Below, one piece after another: positions 23,260-33,805 of a stretch of DNA of 64,000 bases (its first letter is position 1; each line of letters starts with the position of its first letter). Below the pieces are notes generated by a model. That model did not search any database, was not told where the DNA came from, and saw nothing but the letters and a program-made list of their open reading frames with translations. Made by a program: the position numbers and the translations under genes. This DNA comes from Magallana gigas (taxonomy: Eukaryota): assembly GCF_963853765.1 (NCBI RefSeq), contig NC_088854.1, forward strand, positions 18,414,001 through 18,478,000. The letters run 5' to 3'.

Positions 23260-26200
23260 TTAGGGTTGAGAGAGAGGGGGAGAATGCTCCTCATGGTCAT
23301 CGACTTTGATCTTACTGTATGCTAGGGGCAATACTGCATTAGGATTAACATAATCTGAGACCCCTGCTATGTTGTAGTTGTTGGCCAATGCGCCATTGCC
23401 ATAGAAATGGAAAAGCATCTGGTTGTCCATGTAAACTCCCTCACGGTCAGGTTGCTGTTTGTTGGGGGTGGTGGAGGTGTAAAAGGGTGGGGCCAGGTAT
23501 CCTTCATAAGCACTGTACATGCGACAAGCCTGGTCATACTCATTGTACAGCATCTGAGGGGAGAGCTGATGGTAAGGGTACCCTGCATAGGCAGTATGTT
23601 CTGTTGTAAAGAAAGATGCAGGAAATTAAAAGGTACTCAAATACACTAATACAAGATCATTAATCCACATTGCAATTTGAGCACTGAATTTCTTCTTGCA
23701 TCTTTAACAATTTCATCCCCGAACATTTTCAAAAGCTTTTTCCTTTTACATTTAACATTCGATTACACACATATCATACTGGTTCAATTATAATGTTAGA
23801 CAATCAAACCCCCTCAATACCTACCTATACCAGGGAAAGCATTTTCTGTCTTTGGAACTTTGAGCGATTCAAATGGAGGCATGACAGCCAGGGGTTTCTG
23901 CATGTGGCCGTAGTCCTCGGCCCCGGACTGGATTCGGATACGCTTCACTTGGTAAGGGTTACCATTCCCTTCTTCCAAATCTGTCCGGGAAAAATATGTT
24001 CTTCATCAAAACCGTGGCTTGCATGCCTCATCTTACATTAAAACTGCTCTGTTTGACAAATATGGGTGTACCCATTTAGTGGCCATCACATATATTTATG
24101 CATATGAATAATATTCACCTCAGTTTAACAGGCCACCCCAAAATCCCCAATATCAATGAGGATGTTAAAATATCAATTGCTCCAGAGATGTCAGTATGCC
24201 ATGAATACTTCACTAGTGGGTAATTTAAGAGTATTTGGTGTCTGACAGTAGCTCATAAAAAAGAAAACTTAATTGCACAAAAACAACTCATTAAAAAAAA
24301 AAAGTAATTAAAGAAAAAGCTGTAATATAAGCCAAGGCTTGAATTATTAAAAGCCTTAATGATCAAGTACTGGGTATTATTGTTCATGAATAAAAATTCA
24401 TCCAGCTAGAAGACAATTTTTAAGAAAATCACAGAAAACCCCATTTCCCCTTACCAAAAGGGTCCTCTGTTGAATTGAAATATTTCAGCATTATTAGAGA
24501 GGTTGAGATTTAAAACGTGTACTGGTACGCATACGTGTGTTATAACTACACGTACAAGTACACATTTTTGTAATTCATCAGTTGAGATTTCATAACTTGT
24601 AGGATATAAACGTGTACGTAAATTTCGACATGAATTTACTTAATTAACTCTAAATTAATGGTGGATTTCTTATCAATTTGCATGCAAATGAAGTTTAAAA
24701 ATCAATGTAATGTACTACAAGAATATATTTACCCATCAATTAGATTATATTTGTTGTAAAAGCTACAAGTTTGTACTTACGTGTAGACGACAGTCTACAA
24801 GTTTAGAAAACGTGAAGAAACTTTGTCGTCACAAAAACTGATGATGTAATACGCGAAGAATTTAGGTGATTCCCCTAGTACACGTACACGTTTGAAATCT
24901 CAACCTCTCTATTATTACCTCTTTTGAAACCAGTCTTCATTTTGTCAATCAGCTTAGAATCCTTCGAGGTTTCTTCATGTATTTGGCTGTAAGACAATGG
25001 AAACAACATACACGTATAAGCAATATAATGGTATACCTTGGGAAGAGCAAATAATACTGTGGAATCATTAATTTTCGTGGGGTCCAATTTTCGTGGATTG
25101 CTGAAATTTTACAGGTTCGTGGGGACGTAATTTCGTGTATTCTCTTAATCCCACAGAGGAAATATTACTTTATTACCCCAATTTATTAATTCGTGGAGGA
25201 TGTTAATTCGTGGATGAGAGGTACCCACGAATTCAATGAAAATTGAGCCACCACGAAATCTAATGATTCCACAGTACACCAGTCTTCAGTAGGTCACATT
25301 AACGTACTCAGACTCCATGGATGATGTCACTAGGTTGGATTCTCCAGGGGACAGGGGTAACTTGACAGGCTTTCCTCCTTTCTCATTCCTCTTCCCATTC
25401 TTACTATTCCCTTCGGCGACTGGTCCTTTCGCCATCAACTCGGCAATCTATACATGTGTGATTATTGCTTCATGAATACATTCAATCAAGCCCAAGTACA
25501 AACACATAACTGCATGAATGGGTTTCAAGAGAACATATACAGTTCATCTATAAACATGTCTATAAAGTATAAAAGTGGTATGGTTTTGGACAACGTATAT
25601 GAAATACATTTGTTCACAATTACTATGACTCTCTCTTTTCTTTATTTCAATTCATATTAATTGCAAATAATGCAAACAACCCCCCCCCCCCCCCCCCCCC
25701 CCCCATTGCTTCAATCATACTTACATGATATTTTCAAATAAATTCCAAGCATAATTTAATTTCAATACCTGATTTTGAAATTCTTGAGGCAGTGCTTCAT
25801 TGACCAGTTTCAGATACTCTACACACATTTCCAAGATGGATGCCATATCTGTTTTGCGACCCCTAACATAAGGCAATAGCACCCTCAGTTGGTCACAACT
25901 ATCTTTTATTCTTTCTCTGGCAATGACAATGTAAACATTTTAATGAAACTTCTCAAAACTCATTTCAAAATTATTTACTGTCATTTTCCTATACATGTAC
26001 CTCCTAACTTTTTCCTTCGTCGTATGATCAATTGCACTGCTACTCTTGTGCACCTTCCCATCTCTGAGCTTTGGCACCATGGCTTTCAGTTGAGAAAATG
26101 AAGGAAGACGCACGAGGCACTTATCCAAACACTGGGACAATGCAGGAGATTCAATTCCACTATCCATAGAAATCCTGCAAAACAATGAAAATGTTAATAT

Positions 26201-29187
26201 AATTTCCTTGGCAAAAAAAATGACGTCTGCTGTCGGGATACATGAAACAAACATCGTCGGTTTCTCTCCTTGAAATTTACAACTGTGTTAAAATATCGAC
26301 GTCATAGTTACTTTGAACTTATCAAAGGTGAACAGAAACGACATACGTCACGCTTGAGCCGTCCCCACTCTCAGAAGCTGGCGTTGATGGTGTCTCAGGG
26401 GTCACTGGGGTAGAAGGGGTACCCGGGTTTGAAAATTCTTGGACTTCTAATTCGGGAGTATTTTTCTCTTCTTTTAAAATAAATTAATATATGTGCATAA
26501 ACCCATCAGTAAGTGTGATGTGTTTTTCTATTTTTGAAGAATATGTAGGGTGTCATAAGATACCTGCAATCAACACAGCTGATGTCCATTTCGTGTATTT
26601 ATCTCTAATATCTCTGATATTCAATGGCTGAAAGATCATTTCGTCAACGCCATGTAAACGTAAATCAACTGCAAAGAATAAACGGTACCGAGCAGTCATA
26701 ACGCATATATTTAACACCCCCCCCCCCCCCCCCCGCAATCCGCCTTGGAATTACCATTTTATCTTCTATAAACTGATACACAAAACTTACCATCAGCAGA
26801 TCCCTCAGAAACACCAATGATGACTGTGCTTCTATTACAACTGCTAGCATATCTGACAATGAAACGAAATAAATTAGCTAGACAGTTACATCCTAATAGA
26901 ATATACAGTTTCGACCAAAATATAAAATAACGTATATGACATTTTCTTACCTGATGGATGTGGTGAGACTCAGCATCTCCTGGGACACGGGCATGTCAAT
27001 CATCGCCCAGATCAGGAGGTAGCACTGCGCATTGCATGCCTCGAACGCCTCCTCTATCCGACACACCCGAATCTCGTGGGCTAGCGTCTGTTTGCTGATC
27101 ATGTCTCGTAGATCGATCGCTCGGGGCCCCTCCCCTACCACCAGGGACATTGAATTCATGCCCGAGGTCTGAAAAACATACATATTATTCTGATATATAC
27201 GTACCCCGTTTTTGATCATCGTACCACGTCAAGATGCAACTTGGTCAATGGCCGATGTTTTTTGGTCAGTTGGTCAGATTTGTGTCGTACTGTTTTTGTC
27301 ATACAGAATAAATAGAAAAAAACCCTTTTTTGGTAAATGGCACTAGATAGTTCCTGATACCACTATTCTTTANNNNNNNNNNNNNNNNNNNNNNNNNNNN
27401 NNNNNNNNNNNNNNNNNNNNNNNNNNNNNNNNNNNNNNNNNNNNNNNNNNNNNNNNNNNNNNNNNNNNNNNNNNNNNNNNNNNNNNNNNNNNNNNNNNNN
27501 NNNNNCATTTGTACAAAAGTATTGCAATTCCAAAGTAATGCAAGTAAATTTCACTTCGCATCATATCGTCCAACAACACATGTAAAAGAACTGCAATTTC
27601 CCCAGAGCCCTACCAAATCTGGAAGTTCTCCGATAGAGAAATTGGCGTCTTCAGCTGCATTATCATTGTACACCGAGATATCCTCGAATCCTAGAAAGGA
27701 CTCGGTTCCAATGTTGAGTTCCACCTGCTCGTTGTTATCGTCGCCACTTACATTGTCAAGAGACGATGACACTTCCCCTTCCGTTCCATCGAACTCCTCT
27801 TTCTCGCCTTCAGAACAAGACAAACCTTGCTGCTTCTTTTCTGTCTTTGCAGCCTTGGTTTTAAGTTGTCTGTTTATTTTACGCCTGTTTCTGGCTGCAG
27901 GTTTCATTTTTTATTCTTCCAGCTTTCTTTTTTTCATCTCATACCTCACTACACTTCCATGACTGTTCTAAACTGGACGGGTCAATTCTTTTGTGTTTTA
28001 TACAATGATTACCCTGTGTGTGCCTCACCGATATTTGATTGGACAGAATTCGACACAAACAAGTGCCAAGGCTGTATTCGAAAGGTTTTTGTGTAACAGA
28101 AAGGTCAGGTCAAGCACTGTGTCGTTCACACTGGTGTCACACGCGTGTTCGATATGGATTTCAATCATTATTTATACTGTTATTCAAAAGGTCTGGCTTC
28201 AGTGCTAACTAGAATTGTGGGATGGGGGATATCGTTGGACGCAGGGGAGGGTTAAAGGAGTTAGATTTGTCTTTGTACAACGTATCTTTTAACATGTAAT
28301 AAAATTTCGAACCACGTGGCATGAACTAAAATGTGTATTTTTATTTTCGCCACATTACTGATTGTGACAAATTAAAATAAAAGGCGTTTGTATGTAAAAT
28401 TGAAAAAAAAATTATCATACGATAATTATATCTGATCCATACCATATAAATATGTGAGTTGCCACGTGACCATGAATTGTGCAGTAATGTACGTTAGTTT
28501 AACTCCATCATCCTCCTTTTTTAAAATAACTAAATAAATTAATGTAATAGTACTCTGAATCTGCAAGCTTTTTATTTACAATAATTTAAATGAATTCTCT
28601 AAATACTGGACTGGCAAAGCTACTATCGTTTTCATCCGGTTGATGGGGAGCAAGGCACACCAACAATGTAGTGCAACAACTGATAATACACAGGTGATGT
28701 ATTCGCCCGTACATTTACCTTATGGTAACTCGGTCTCTTTGGTAATATCCGTCGCTTCATGTCTACAAGGGAGGGGTATTTGGTCAGCAAGCTCTGGACA
28801 ACCAACAGAACCTCTCCCCCGGGCTTAAAGTCCGAGCTACAAAACACTCAGAATTAGTCAATTGGAAAATAGTAAAATTCACATTCAATGAACTCGTCAT
28901 ATTGGTTTAGTAACAATAACTGGTGTTCTTTGAATGATCATAAAAAAGTGTTCAGTTGCTCTCTATGAACAAACGTTGTTAAAACTAAAATAGAGTCAAA
29001 TTTAAATTAAGTAATTTCAAATAATTTTAATAAAATAAATGAAATCCATTTCAAAATAAAGCCTTGAAATTGTTAATGCAAACATCATAAATATATAATG
29101 TTTAGTCTTTACCTGTTTACTACTTTATCCGCTATTTCCTCCTTACCTGGGTTTCTTTTTCCTTTGCACGGGTAGTTCGAATTCCAT
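23260..29187 (-). CDS. SOHLH2: Spermatogenesis- and oogenesis-specific bHLH transcription factor, SOHLH2-like; 12 coding exons, ~564 aa
   Basis: Exons (minus strand) 29187-29147, 28836-28719, 27168-26951, 26852-26791, 26668-26564, 26470-26347, 26174-26001, 25916-25769, 25447-25308, 24986-24919, 23980-23825, 23600-23260 are all GT-AG and phase-compatible; total 1695 nt = 565 codons. The bHLH HTTKEKVRRERIKDSCDQLRVLLPYVRGRKTDMASILEMCVEYLKLV closely resembles vertebrate SOHLH2/SOHLH1 as recalled. SOHLH1 versus SOHLH2 orthology needs a tree. Intron 2 contains an N-gap, so extra exons are possible. Confidence 0.85.
24496..24910. mobile_element. MITE (~415 bp) with ~25-30 bp TIRs in SOHLH intron 10
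   Basis: AGAGAGGTTGAGATTTAAAACGTGTAC ... GTACACGTTTGAAATCTCAACCTCTCT, flanked by direct repeat ATTATT (24490-24495 and 24911-24916). An alternative reading is a TTAT TSD with TIRs one base longer. Confidence 0.85.
25057..25274. mobile_element. MITE (218 bp) with TA target duplication, Tc1/mariner-like signature, in SOHLH intron 9
   Basis: TA|CTGTGGAATCATTA ... TAATGATTCCACAG|TA; internal repeated AATTTCGTG/TTCGTGGA motifs. Confidence 0.85.
27373..27505. other. Assembly gap (133 N)
   Basis: Run of N characters. Confidence 1.
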
Positions 29188-32600: not shown

Positions 32601-33805
32601 TATTTTTCTCAGCTTGCTAACCAGCTCCGATAAGCTGGTTATTTTTCCCTCTTTCTGTGAAGACTGCTCATTGTTTAGGATCTCTTTTTCTATTTTCTCT
32701 TTGTCTTTATTGAGGTCGTCTTCAGCAACAGACGGTGTTTCTTCTTTCTTTTTAGTAGTTTTGCTCAGAAAATTTATGAGTTTTCTCCTCCTTGCATTCT
32801 TATCTTTATCTGAAAGCTTGGTCCAGGGTTGACCGATTCTATCCTTTTCTACCCAATGCCTGGTTTTGTCTTTGTTTGATANNNNNNNNNNNNNNNNNNN
32901 NNNNNNNNNNNNNNNNNNNNNNNNNNNNNNNNNNNNNNNNNNNNNNNNNNNNNNNNNNNNNNNNNNNNNNNNNNNNNNNNNNNNNNNNNNNNNNNNNNNN
33001 NNNNNNNNNNNNNNNNNTATTACTAGTAACCAAGTAAAGATTTTAAAATAATGACTTTTGTGTTGTTTTGACAGTATATTTCTTTAAATTTCAATAATTT
33101 TTGGGAAACAATTAACATAAGGTAAAATTTTTAAGGCCAACAAATTGCGTCAGAAGGGGAATAACTCTTTTTTGTTCGAATCTTTTATTAGAAAATTAAG
33201 TTATATTCCTTTCCAGTACATACGTCATACATGCATAATGCTGTGTGTAGTGCCCAAGACTTATCATTATTTTTAGGGGTCAATCTTAAGTCCATATAAT
33301 TGAAAAAACGCATACAAACTATTTCCCTTATTTTAATTCTAGCCTCCCAATAAAGCTGAGAAAAATTGTGCAAAGAAAAAAGTACCTTTACTTTGGTAAG
33401 ATTCTTTTTCCATCATGTGTTTATTTTTCACATCAGTCAAAAGTTTTTTGACTTTTTCCAATACTTGACGGTGATGATCAATCAGGTTTTTATGATTGAC
33501 CTTGGTCATGACGTCATTGGTTTCCTTTGGTATTGACGCCGACGGAATGGCGACCGGTGATTTCCTAAGAGAATGTTGGGCTTCATCTTCTCTCCTCTTT
33601 GCTGTCTCTATTTGATTATTTTTCACCATTGACTTGATTTGTCGAATGAAGTGAATGATTTTGGCGTATTCTCGCGGTTTGTTAAAGAAAGAATCATCAC
33701 TAAGGATGGTTTGGACCTGGCTACTGCCATTGGCTGATTTTGGGACATCGGGCGTGAACCATGACTTGTCTGGTTCCCAAGGATCAGCTAATATCCCATC
33801 ATAAT
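29664..33805 (-). CDS. Uncharacterised single-pass membrane protein, 5'-incomplete
   Basis: Phase-compatible exons 33805-33386, (gap)32881-32510, 32387-32288 (TM helix AAWIGLAVGGCLAFFAFALCFFVAVLI followed by KTFRRKR), 32196-32080, 31968-31849, 29838-29664 (Ser/Pro-rich tail, TAG stop). One acceptor lies inside the N-gap; the start exon was not identified with certainty. Confidence 0.75.
30548..31848. repeat. ~47-bp hairpin-containing minisatellite, ~28 copies, intronic
   Basis: Unit TTTGACTGTCTCATGACTACACTAGTCAGTCTGTCAGTTTGTTTATA with internal palindrome TGACTA-CAC-TAGTCA. Confidence 0.95.
32882..33017. other. Assembly gap (136 N) cutting a coding exon of the membrane-protein gene
   Basis: Run of N; the minus-strand reading frame is open up to the gap edge at 32881. 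Confidence 1.

What the first reader, a model, noticed from the sequence alone, without database searches (positions are those of the whole stretch)
26564..27168. A CheY/response-regulator-like pseudo-receiver domain fused to a germline bHLH (SOHLH) factor in an animal
Seen: exons 3-5 splice to MSLVVGEGPRAIDLRDMISKQTLAHEIRVCRIEEAFEACNAQCYLLIWAMIDMPVSQEMLSLTTSIRYASSCNRSTVIIGVSEGSADVDLRLHGVDEMIFQPLNIRDIRDKYTKW (~115 aa). Established: REC domains follow (beta/alpha)5 with the pattern hhVDD ... eeAle ... hhhD-x-x-MP ... IR ... hhhh(T/S) ... aGad-y-h-KP ... L. Inference: this stretch tracks that pattern (LVVGE, EEAFEAC, YLLIWAMIDMP, TSIR, TVIIGVS, HGVDEMIFQP), but the acidic pocket, the phospho-acceptor Asp position and the Lys are substituted, so it would be a pseudo-receiver. 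Animals lack canonical His-Asp two-component signalling, so a REC-fold sensor or dimerisation module on a gametogenesis regulator would be unusual. As I recall it, the human SOHLH2 N-terminus ends in a similar HGMD...EPL...KYW motif, which would make the module ancient and usually unannotated.
Basis: partly seen in the sequence, partly recalled or inferred. Interest (0 to 1): 0.78.

Follow-up and report, generated by a model that had tools for sequence, protein, structure and literature searches.

The report
Degenerate receiver domain on oyster SOHLH
An oyster germ-cell transcription factor, like human SOHLH2, starts with a decayed copy of the "receiver" domain of bacterial, fungal and plant two-component signalling, a system that animals are said to lack, and the literature I searched does not describe it.

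Summary

**Exons and transcripts.** Three minus-strand GT-AG exons (27168-26951, 26852-26791, 26668-26564) splice in frame. RNA contigs from four studies show exactly these junctions. The gene was published as Cg-Sohlh1, a gonad-specific bHLH factor of Crassostrea gigas, and only its bHLH domain had been noted.

**Sequence homology.** A profile of the N-terminal module from 16 molluscs, a coral and a mammal hits solved receiver (REC) domains. The best is E 2e-8, and the first 17 hits are all REC. The closest are receivers of fungal, plant and bacterial hybrid histidine kinases. The mollusc-only profile still gives E 2e-5.

**Catalytic residues.**
- The phospho-acceptor Asp position is never Asp (Met in oyster).
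- The Lys is replaced by Gln, Glu, His or Gly.
- The acidic pair is lost.
- The Ser/Thr and the Pro are kept.
- The genome gives no HisKA, Hpt or Pfam REC hit.

It is therefore a pseudo-receiver. Its function is inferred: a phosphorylation-independent interaction or regulatory module. Pfam does not annotate the domain, and no paper I found mentions it.

The parts
26951..27168 (-). Exon holding b1-a1-b2-a2-b3 and most of a3 of the REC-like domain. In-frame Met codons at 27159 and 27150. The acceptor-Asp position is Met in the motif IWA-M-IDMP.
   Evidence: joint 26951/26852; profile hit E 3e-24
26791..26852 (-). Exon holding the end of a3, the a3-b4 loop and b4 (..RYASSCNRSTVIIGVS..). The Ser at the Thr87-equivalent position is kept.
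26564..26668 (-). Exon holding the short a4, b5 and a5 (..LRLHGVDEMIFQPL..KYTKW..). Gln replaces the conserved Lys; the following Pro is invariant.
26346..26470 (-). Ser/Thr/Pro-rich linker exon after the REC-like domain.
   Evidence: joints 26564/26470 and 26346/26173
26001..26173 (-). Exon ending in the basic region of the bHLH (..DHTTKEKVR).
25769..25916 (-). Exon with helix 1, loop and helix 2 of the SOHLH-type bHLH (RERIKDSCDQLRVLLPY..).
   Evidence: (weak PF00010 on the half domain); PF00010 is precomputed for P0001
27614..27907 (-). Alternative first coding exon (98 codons). It has a basic N-terminus and a LGFED..VY motif found before the domain in other molluscs, and it splices to 27168.
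   Evidence: (loose end at 27169); similar motifs in P0003, P0014, P0011
28719..28838 (-). Exon 2 of the isoform X2 model, which also splices to 27168 (boundaries approximate).
   Evidence: second loose end; published Cg-Sohlh1 primer at 28798-28817
29149..29187 (-). Exon 1 coding start of isoform X2 (MEFELPVQRKKKP); boundaries approximate.
23260..25447 (-). Four C-terminal exons (about 25447-25307, 24985-24920, 23999-23826, 23601-23260), ending with the conserved DYVNPNAVLP motif and the stop codon.

Best explanation
The stretch encodes the N-terminal domain, about 120 residues, of an oyster germline bHLH transcription factor published as Cg-Sohlh1. The domain is shared with mammalian SOHLH2. 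It is a true but degenerate homologue of the receiver (REC, CheY-like) domain of His-Asp phosphorelays. In sequence it is closest to receivers attached to hybrid histidine kinases of fungi, plants and bacteria. It keeps the (beta/alpha)5 fold, the Ser/Thr after b4 and the Pro after b5. It has lost the phospho-acceptor Asp (Met here), the acidic pair and the Lys, and the genome shows no histidine kinase or HPt partner. It therefore cannot act as a phospho-switch. The most likely function (inferred, about 50%) is a constitutive protein-protein interaction or regulatory module that tunes partner choice or activity of the adjacent bHLH. It would use the strongly conserved a3/b4/a4/b5 side, as atypical bacterial response regulators and plant pseudo-response regulators do. 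Shown here: exon structure, transcription, fold, homology, loss of catalytic residues, and conservation from coral and molluscs to mammals. Inferred: the function, and vertical descent from an ancestral eukaryotic phosphorelay.
Against: No single sequence scores against Pfam PF00072 even at E 10, and the mammal-only profile finds no REC in the PDB. The link to REC therefore rests on the mollusc, coral and mammal profile and on predicted structures. No experiment addresses the function. The homodimer prediction gave no verdict. Several heterodont and unionid bivalve orthologues lack the domain, so it may be dispensable in some lineages. The origin (vertical or by transfer) was not tested with a tree.
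Confidence: 0.8

Rival explanations
1. The domain is a flavodoxin-like or Rossmann-like fold that arose independently, or from another alpha/beta family, and only resembles REC by convergence.
For: Pfam PF00072 does not score any single member. Identity to REC structures is only 10-21%.
Against: Profile E-values of 2e-8 and 2e-5 extend over the whole domain. The REC-specific motifs align in register: h-h-h-h-[D]-x-x-x-P after b3, IR in a3, h-h-h-h-S/T in b4, and G-x-D...x-P at b5. Every top structural hit is REC, not flavodoxin or another family of the fold.
Confidence: 0.06
2. The domain derives from REC but came into an early animal by horizontal transfer from a bacterium, not by vertical descent from the ancestral eukaryotic phosphorelay.
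For: The bacterial GacS D1 receiver is the second-best sequence hit and the best structural hit. Animals otherwise lack the pathway (reviews found use the phrase 'absent in animals').
Against: Nine of the eleven best PDB sequence hits are eukaryotic phosphorelay receivers: fungal hybrid kinases, SLN1, SSK1, AHK5 and ETR1. The PDB itself is dominated by bacterial regulators. The fungal REC transcription factors Prr1 and SKN7 are among the best AlphaFold DB matches. No tree was built, so this remains open.
Confidence: 0.3
3. The domain is still a switch. It would be modified or bind a ligand at the vestigial active-site face through non-canonical residues, so it would not be an inert scaffold.
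For: The Ser/Thr after b4 and the Pro after b5 are retained. Oysters have an Asp two residues after the acceptor position, and the coral has Glu at the acceptor column. Human SOHLH2 E79 and E105, altered in ovarian-insufficiency patients (PMC10002966), map to the loops on that face: A2 columns 70 and 96, one nearly invariant and one invariant in mammals.
Against: None of these acidic residues is conserved across the family. The active-site loops are the least conserved parts in molluscs. No kinase or HPt partner was found in the genome.
Confidence: 0.12
4. The exons are a gene-model artefact or an untranslated leader.
For: None found.
Against: The spliced contigs come from four studies. The open frame is conserved from coral to mammals with domain-wide constraint. 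A recombinant protein of about 70 kDa and an antibody signal in spermatogonia are reported for this gene (PMC6529535).
Confidence: 0.01

Closest known systems
Receiver domains of hybrid histidine kinases and eukaryotic phosphorelays (PDB 3c97; GacS D1 7qz2; SLN1 1oxk, 2r25, 8phx; AHK5 4euk; ETR1 1dcf; SSK1 5kbx)
   Different: No phospho-acceptor Asp, no acidic pair and no Lys. No kinase or HPt in the genome. Fused to a bHLH domain, not to a kinase. Found in animals.
Mammalian SOHLH2 N-terminal region (human Q9NX45 residues 18-147)
   Same: The same position ahead of a SOHLH-type bHLH and the same fold (TM 0.72-0.80). Profile-profile P 1.3e-5. Shared G-x-D...E/Q-P-L...K-Y-W tail.
   Different: Only about 11-16% identity. 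The mammalian profile alone no longer detects REC. The oyster gene was named Sohlh1, not Sohlh2, from a bHLH-only tree (PMC6529535).
Fungal REC-containing transcription factors SKN7 and Prr1
   Same: A eukaryotic transcription factor that combines a DNA-binding domain with a receiver domain. Both are among the best AlphaFold DB matches.
   Different: SKN7 and Prr1 have an HSF-type DNA-binding domain ahead of a C-terminal, phosphorylatable REC (established knowledge). Here the REC is N-terminal, is degenerate, and is paired with a bHLH.
Plant pseudo-response regulators (PRR/TOC1) and atypical bacterial regulators (for example GlnR, HP1043, FrzS)
   Same: Receiver fold retained while the acceptor Asp and/or pocket residues are lost, so they act without phosphorylation, often through dimerisation or partner binding (established knowledge). 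The GlnR_1st family appears among the language-model hits.
   Different: Independent losses in other lineages, and different output domains (CCT, wHTH). No evidence of common descent as pseudo-receivers.

Membership tests
REC / CheY-like receiver domain (Pfam PF00072, CheY-like clan) | Five-stranded parallel (beta/alpha)5 fold with strand order 2-1-3-4-5 | tested here: met
REC / CheY-like receiver domain (Pfam PF00072, CheY-like clan) | Significant sequence similarity to known receivers | tested here: met
   Family profile against PDB sequences: E 2.2e-8 (A1) and 1.8e-5 (molluscs only).
REC / CheY-like receiver domain (Pfam PF00072, CheY-like clan) | Score above Pfam's gathering threshold for PF00072 | tested here: not met
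   No PF00072 hit for any of 18 members even at E 10, for single exons, or in the six-frame genome search.
REC / CheY-like receiver domain (Pfam PF00072, CheY-like clan) | Phospho-acceptor Asp at the end of b3 | tested here: not met
   The column is M/L/K/Y/Q/V/E and never D; it is Met in the window.
REC / CheY-like receiver domain (Pfam PF00072, CheY-like clan) | Acidic pair after b1 that binds Mg2+ | tested here: not met
   The first position is mostly Gly. The second is variable (E/S/N/G/D/M/T).
REC / CheY-like receiver domain (Pfam PF00072, CheY-like clan) | Ser/Thr at the end of b4 | tested here: met
   S, T or A in 16 of 18 sequences (Ser in the window, GVS). Met in the coral and Ile in the mammal.
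REC / CheY-like receiver domain (Pfam PF00072, CheY-like clan) | Lys at the end of b5, followed by Pro | tested here: not met
   The Lys column is Q/E/H/G and never K. The following Pro is invariant in all 18.
REC / CheY-like receiver domain (Pfam PF00072, CheY-like clan) | Cognate histidine kinase or HPt donor encoded in the genome | tested here: not met
   No HisKA (PF00512) or Hpt (PF01627) match in the 564-Mb assembly; the controls ring in 12 and 9 of 14 genomes. Caveat: the search is six-frame and exon by exon.
SOHLH germline bHLH factors | SOHLH-type bHLH domain | tested here: met
   The split bHLH at 26001-26173 and 25769-25916 is near-identical to mollusc proteins that NCBI names SOHLH2, and 55% identical to the mammalian SOHLH2 bHLH. 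PF00010 is recorded for the orthologue P0001.
SOHLH germline bHLH factors | Germ-cell or gonad-restricted expression | not tested
   Taken from PMC6529535. Its Cg-Sohlh1 primers match the window with no mismatch. The tissues of the runs laid here are coded and unknown.
Orthology with vertebrate SOHLH2 specifically | REC-like N-domain followed by a bHLH, shared to the exclusion of the paralogue | tested here: inconclusive
   The domain is present in mammalian SOHLH2 (111 of 111 sequences hit by the A1 HMM) and absent from the oyster paralogue Cg-Sohlh2. The published bHLH-only tree places the window gene in a separate 'invertebrate SOHLH1' clade. No new tree was made.

The most novel reading that the evidence does not exclude
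The SOHLH N-terminal module is the surviving, vertically inherited remnant of the ancestral eukaryotic His-Asp phosphorelay in animals. A receiver domain would have been fused to a bHLH before cnidarians and bilaterians split, lost its phospho-chemistry when kinases and HPt proteins disappeared, and been kept from corals to humans as a regulatory surface needed for germ-cell differentiation. The human infertility variants E79K and E105G would act through this surface.
Probability: 0.4. Interest if true: 0.85.

Novelty: new variant of a known kind. Interest (0 to 1): 0.72.

Why it matters
Textbooks and current reviews state that two-component signalling is absent from animals. Here a receiver-domain homologue with statistical support is conserved in a germline master regulator from coral and molluscs to humans. 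Pfam and SMART see only the bHLH domain in these proteins.

- **For two-component and evolution specialists.** It gives a concrete relic with which to date and trace the loss of the pathway in animals.
- **For reproductive biology.** It defines a folded, testable domain covering about 30% of SOHLH2. Three of the five missense variants reported in women with ovarian insufficiency fall inside it, including the two that the review calls deleterious.
- **For orthology.** It offers an architecture-based marker that conflicts with the current Sohlh1/Sohlh2 naming in molluscs.
- **For detection.** The mammalian sequences alone no longer detect REC. The oyster sequence is the bridge that makes the homology visible.

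Tried and rejected
- **Pfam.** Searches on single exons and on 18 single domain sequences gave no REC hit.
- **Mammal-only profile.** The profile of the mammalian SOHLH2 N-domain alone found nothing meaningful in the PDB.
- **Homodimer prediction.** Two copies of the oyster domain scored 0.00 and the job returned no verdict. This is not evidence for or against binding.
- **Homologue searches.** The word-index searches returned only molluscs, one coral, two elasmobranchs and mammals.
- **Literature.** SOHLH was searched together with CheY, receiver domain, REC domain, response regulator and AlphaFold. No paper describes the domain. The first broad search was uninformative.
- **Oyster paralogue.** Cg-Sohlh2 was fetched from contig C5. 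It has a bHLH but no detectable REC-like exon.
- **Rejected readings.** A gene-model artefact was rejected on the RNA contigs. A functional phospho-acceptor was rejected on the residue columns.
- **Not possible here.** No eukaryotic receiver sequences could be fetched, so a REC-domain tree to decide between vertical origin and transfer could not be built.

Full report
**1. The observation**

The window is AT-rich animal DNA, about 35% G+C. On the minus strand, three exons carry canonical AG acceptors and GT donors: 27168-26951, 26852-26791 and 26668-26564.

Local tblastn with the closest database protein laid out a 12-exon gene from 29187 to 23260. That protein is P0001, Crassostrea gigas XP_011419198.1, annotated as uncharacterized LOC105322259 isoform X2. 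It was found with exon 3 alone at E 1e-33 and 93% identity.

Contigs of four public runs from four studies lie only on the exons. They show the joints 26951/26852, 26791/26668, 26564/26470, 26346/26173 and 26001/25916, all CT..AC on the plus strand.

The same contigs show two alternative upstream exons joined to 27168.
- One is the exon at about 28838-28719.
- The other is a 98-codon first exon at 27907-27614. Its LGFED..VY motif recurs before the domain in other molluscs.

**2. Which gene it is**

Downstream of a Ser/Thr/Pro-rich linker lies a split bHLH (..HTTKEKVR / RERIKDSCDQLRVLLPY..). It is nearly identical in bivalves, gastropods and cephalopods, some of which NCBI names SOHLH2. It is 55% identical to the mammalian SOHLH2 bHLH.

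The primers published for Cg-Sohlh1 match the window at 28798-28817 and 23467-23486 without mismatch. The gene is therefore the Cg-Sohlh1 of PMC6529535. That paper reports three things:
- expression is gonad-specific;
- the protein is found in spermatogonia and spermatocytes;
- SMART finds only a bHLH domain.

**3. What the N-terminal module is**

*Sequence.* I aligned the module from 16 molluscs, the coral Acropora and one mammalian SOHLH2 (alignment A1). A profile of A1 searched against all PDB sequences finds a fungal histidine-kinase receiver, 3c97_A, at E 2.2e-8, aligned over positions 5-120 of 132. The fungal origin of 3c97 is from my memory. Further hits are:
- GacS D1 at 2.8e-7;
- Candida SLN1 at 1.9e-6;
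- AHK5, two further chains labelled only 'histidine kinase' (Foldseek names one, 8phn, as a Chaetomium hybrid kinase), SSK1, yeast SLN1 and ETR1.

The first 17 hits are all receiver domains. The mollusc-only profile A3 still reaches 1.8e-5.

*Structure.* AlphaFold2 on A1 gives pLDDT 92.3 and pTM 0.87, with the element order b1-a1-b2-a2-b3-a3-b4-a4(short)-b5-a5.
- All 50 listed Foldseek PDB hits are REC domains, TM 0.58-0.77.
- Protein-language-model features independently point to CheY-clan families: OKR_DC_1_N, GlnR_1st and Response_reg. I treat these as leads only.

*What fails.* No single sequence scores against Pfam PF00072, and that model finds nothing in the oyster genome. This is a divergent relative of the family, not a member by Pfam's threshold.

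**4. It is a pseudo-receiver**

I used the HMM alignments to 3c97 and GacS D1 and the column counts.

| Canonical REC feature | What the SOHLH family has |
|---|---|
| Acceptor Asp after b3 | Met in the window (IWA-M-IDMP); M/L/K/Y/Q/V/E across the family, never Asp |
| Lys after b5 | Q/E/H/G, never Lys |
| First residue of the acidic pair after b1 | mostly Gly |
| Second residue of the acidic pair | not conserved |
| Ser/Thr after b4 | S, T or A in 16 of 18 |
| Pro after b5 | invariant |

The 564-Mb assembly gives no HisKA, Hpt or Response_reg match, while the control genomes do. The domain itself is single-copy. Canonical phosphotransfer is therefore excluded on sequence grounds.

**5. Conservation and distribution**

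The A1 HMM finds the domain in nearly all mollusc orthologues, in Acropora, and in 111 of 111 mammalian SOHLH2 sequences collected.

The link to mammals rests on several results:
- Profile-profile comparison of molluscs against mammals gives P 1.3e-5 over 105 columns.
- Human SOHLH2 residues 18-147 are the top Swiss-Prot AlphaFold match, and rat and mouse SOHLH2 are also among the top hits.
- SOHLH2-like entries are among the top AlphaFold DB cluster hits.
- A chordate SOHLH2 cluster is the best ESM Atlas match, TM 0.80 and rmsd 2.1 A.

The mammalian profile alone detects no REC, so the invertebrate sequences are what make the homology visible.

The domain is missing in three places:
- gene models of heterodont and unionid bivalves;
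- two elasmobranch models;
- the oyster paralogue Cg-Sohlh2 on contig C5.

**6. How it most likely works**

The following are shown: a folded REC-derived domain, without phospho-chemistry, sits in front of a germline bHLH. What follows is inferred.

Within molluscs, conservation peaks in a3, the a3-b4 loop, b4, a4 and the a4-b5 loop (0.70-0.88). It is lowest in a1 and the b3-a3 loop (0.40-0.44). In phosphorelays, a1 and that loop dock the kinase or HPt. I take this pattern to mean that the donor-docking surface has been released from constraint, while another surface is under selection as a binding site.

The best-supported model is a phosphorylation-independent interaction or regulatory module, as in plant pseudo-response regulators and atypical bacterial regulators. 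I put this at about 50%. A homodimer test gave no verdict.

A review lists five SOHLH2 missense variants from women with ovarian insufficiency and calls E79K and E105G deleterious (PMC10002966). E79, E105 and L120 fall inside residues 18-147. They correspond to columns 70, 96 and 111 of the mammalian alignment, offset +9, and all three residues match the consensus. E79 and E105 lie in loops on the vestigial active-site face. This keeps alive a minority reading in which that face still binds something.

**7. Origin**

Nine of the eleven best PDB sequence hits are eukaryotic phosphorelay receivers, although bacterial regulators dominate the PDB. The fungal REC transcription factors Prr1 and SKN7 are among the best AlphaFold DB matches. 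This favours vertical descent from an ancestral eukaryotic phosphorelay over bacterial transfer, at roughly 55:30. No tree could be built here.

**8. Comparison with what is known, and novelty**

The fold and the pseudo-receiver concept are known. The new points are the REC-bHLH architecture, its presence in animals, and its conservation to humans.

Pfam's precomputed annotation lists no domain over the N-terminal module in any homologue: PF00010 in nearly all, plus PF15372 or PF23177 in a few fused models. The oyster paper saw only the bHLH. Searches combining SOHLH with CheY, receiver domain, REC domain, response regulator or AlphaFold found no description of the domain. Automatic structure-classification resources may already label the human domain; I could not check them.

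The scan's own notes hold only this same finding.

**9. Verdict**

This is a new variant of a known kind, with interest 0.72.

Noticed in passing
window 27614-27907 (-) and 28719-28838 (-): Two mutually exclusive upstream coding exons both splice to 27168. The 98-codon exon at 27907-27614 carries a basic N-terminus and a LGFED..VY motif that recurs before the domain in mussel, pearl oyster and abalone proteins. The motif is also kept in clam orthologues that lack the REC-like domain.
   Followed up: partly
window 26174-26345: One run (X1) has a contig that runs straight through this 172-base intron, while three other runs splice it out. This is intron retention or unspliced RNA or DNA in that library. 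Retention would shift the frame.
   Followed up: no
window 26354 and 26391: All four runs read C and G where the window has T and T. On the coding strand these changes give Gly for Ser and Ala for Glu, as in the RefSeq protein. The window therefore carries a different haplotype in the linker exon.
   Followed up: partly
G000:C5:21474000-21483000 (L006), first exon at about L006 7987-7403 (-): The paralogue published as Cg-Sohlh2 has a bHLH exon (HMM E 1e-5) but no REC-like exon. The published bHLH tree nevertheless places it nearer to vertebrate SOHLH1/2 than the window gene, so architecture and naming disagree.
   Followed up: partly
proteins P0031, P0033, P0034, P0035, P0039, P0040: Orthologues from heterodont and unionid bivalves (Mercenaria, Mactra, Potamilus and others) have a near-identical bHLH and start with the E-D-V-Y motif, but they lack the REC-like domain. 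This is either lineage-specific loss or incomplete gene models.
   Followed up: no
window 26717-26734 (-) and about 25650-25733 (-): There is an 18-base G run in the intron between the second and third domain exons. A second G-rich run lies just after the bHLH exon.
   Followed up: no
window 27373-27505 and 32882-33017: Two masked N runs of 133 and 136 bases. The first lies in the intron upstream of the first domain exon.
   Followed up: no
PDB hits 8i4x_D, 7yqh_D and 7lto_B: The SOHLH N-domain profile gives weak hits (E 0.25-1.5) to Nse6/KRE29 of the Smc5/6 complex, over the b4-a5 part only. They are probably noise but they recur in both searches.
   Followed up: no
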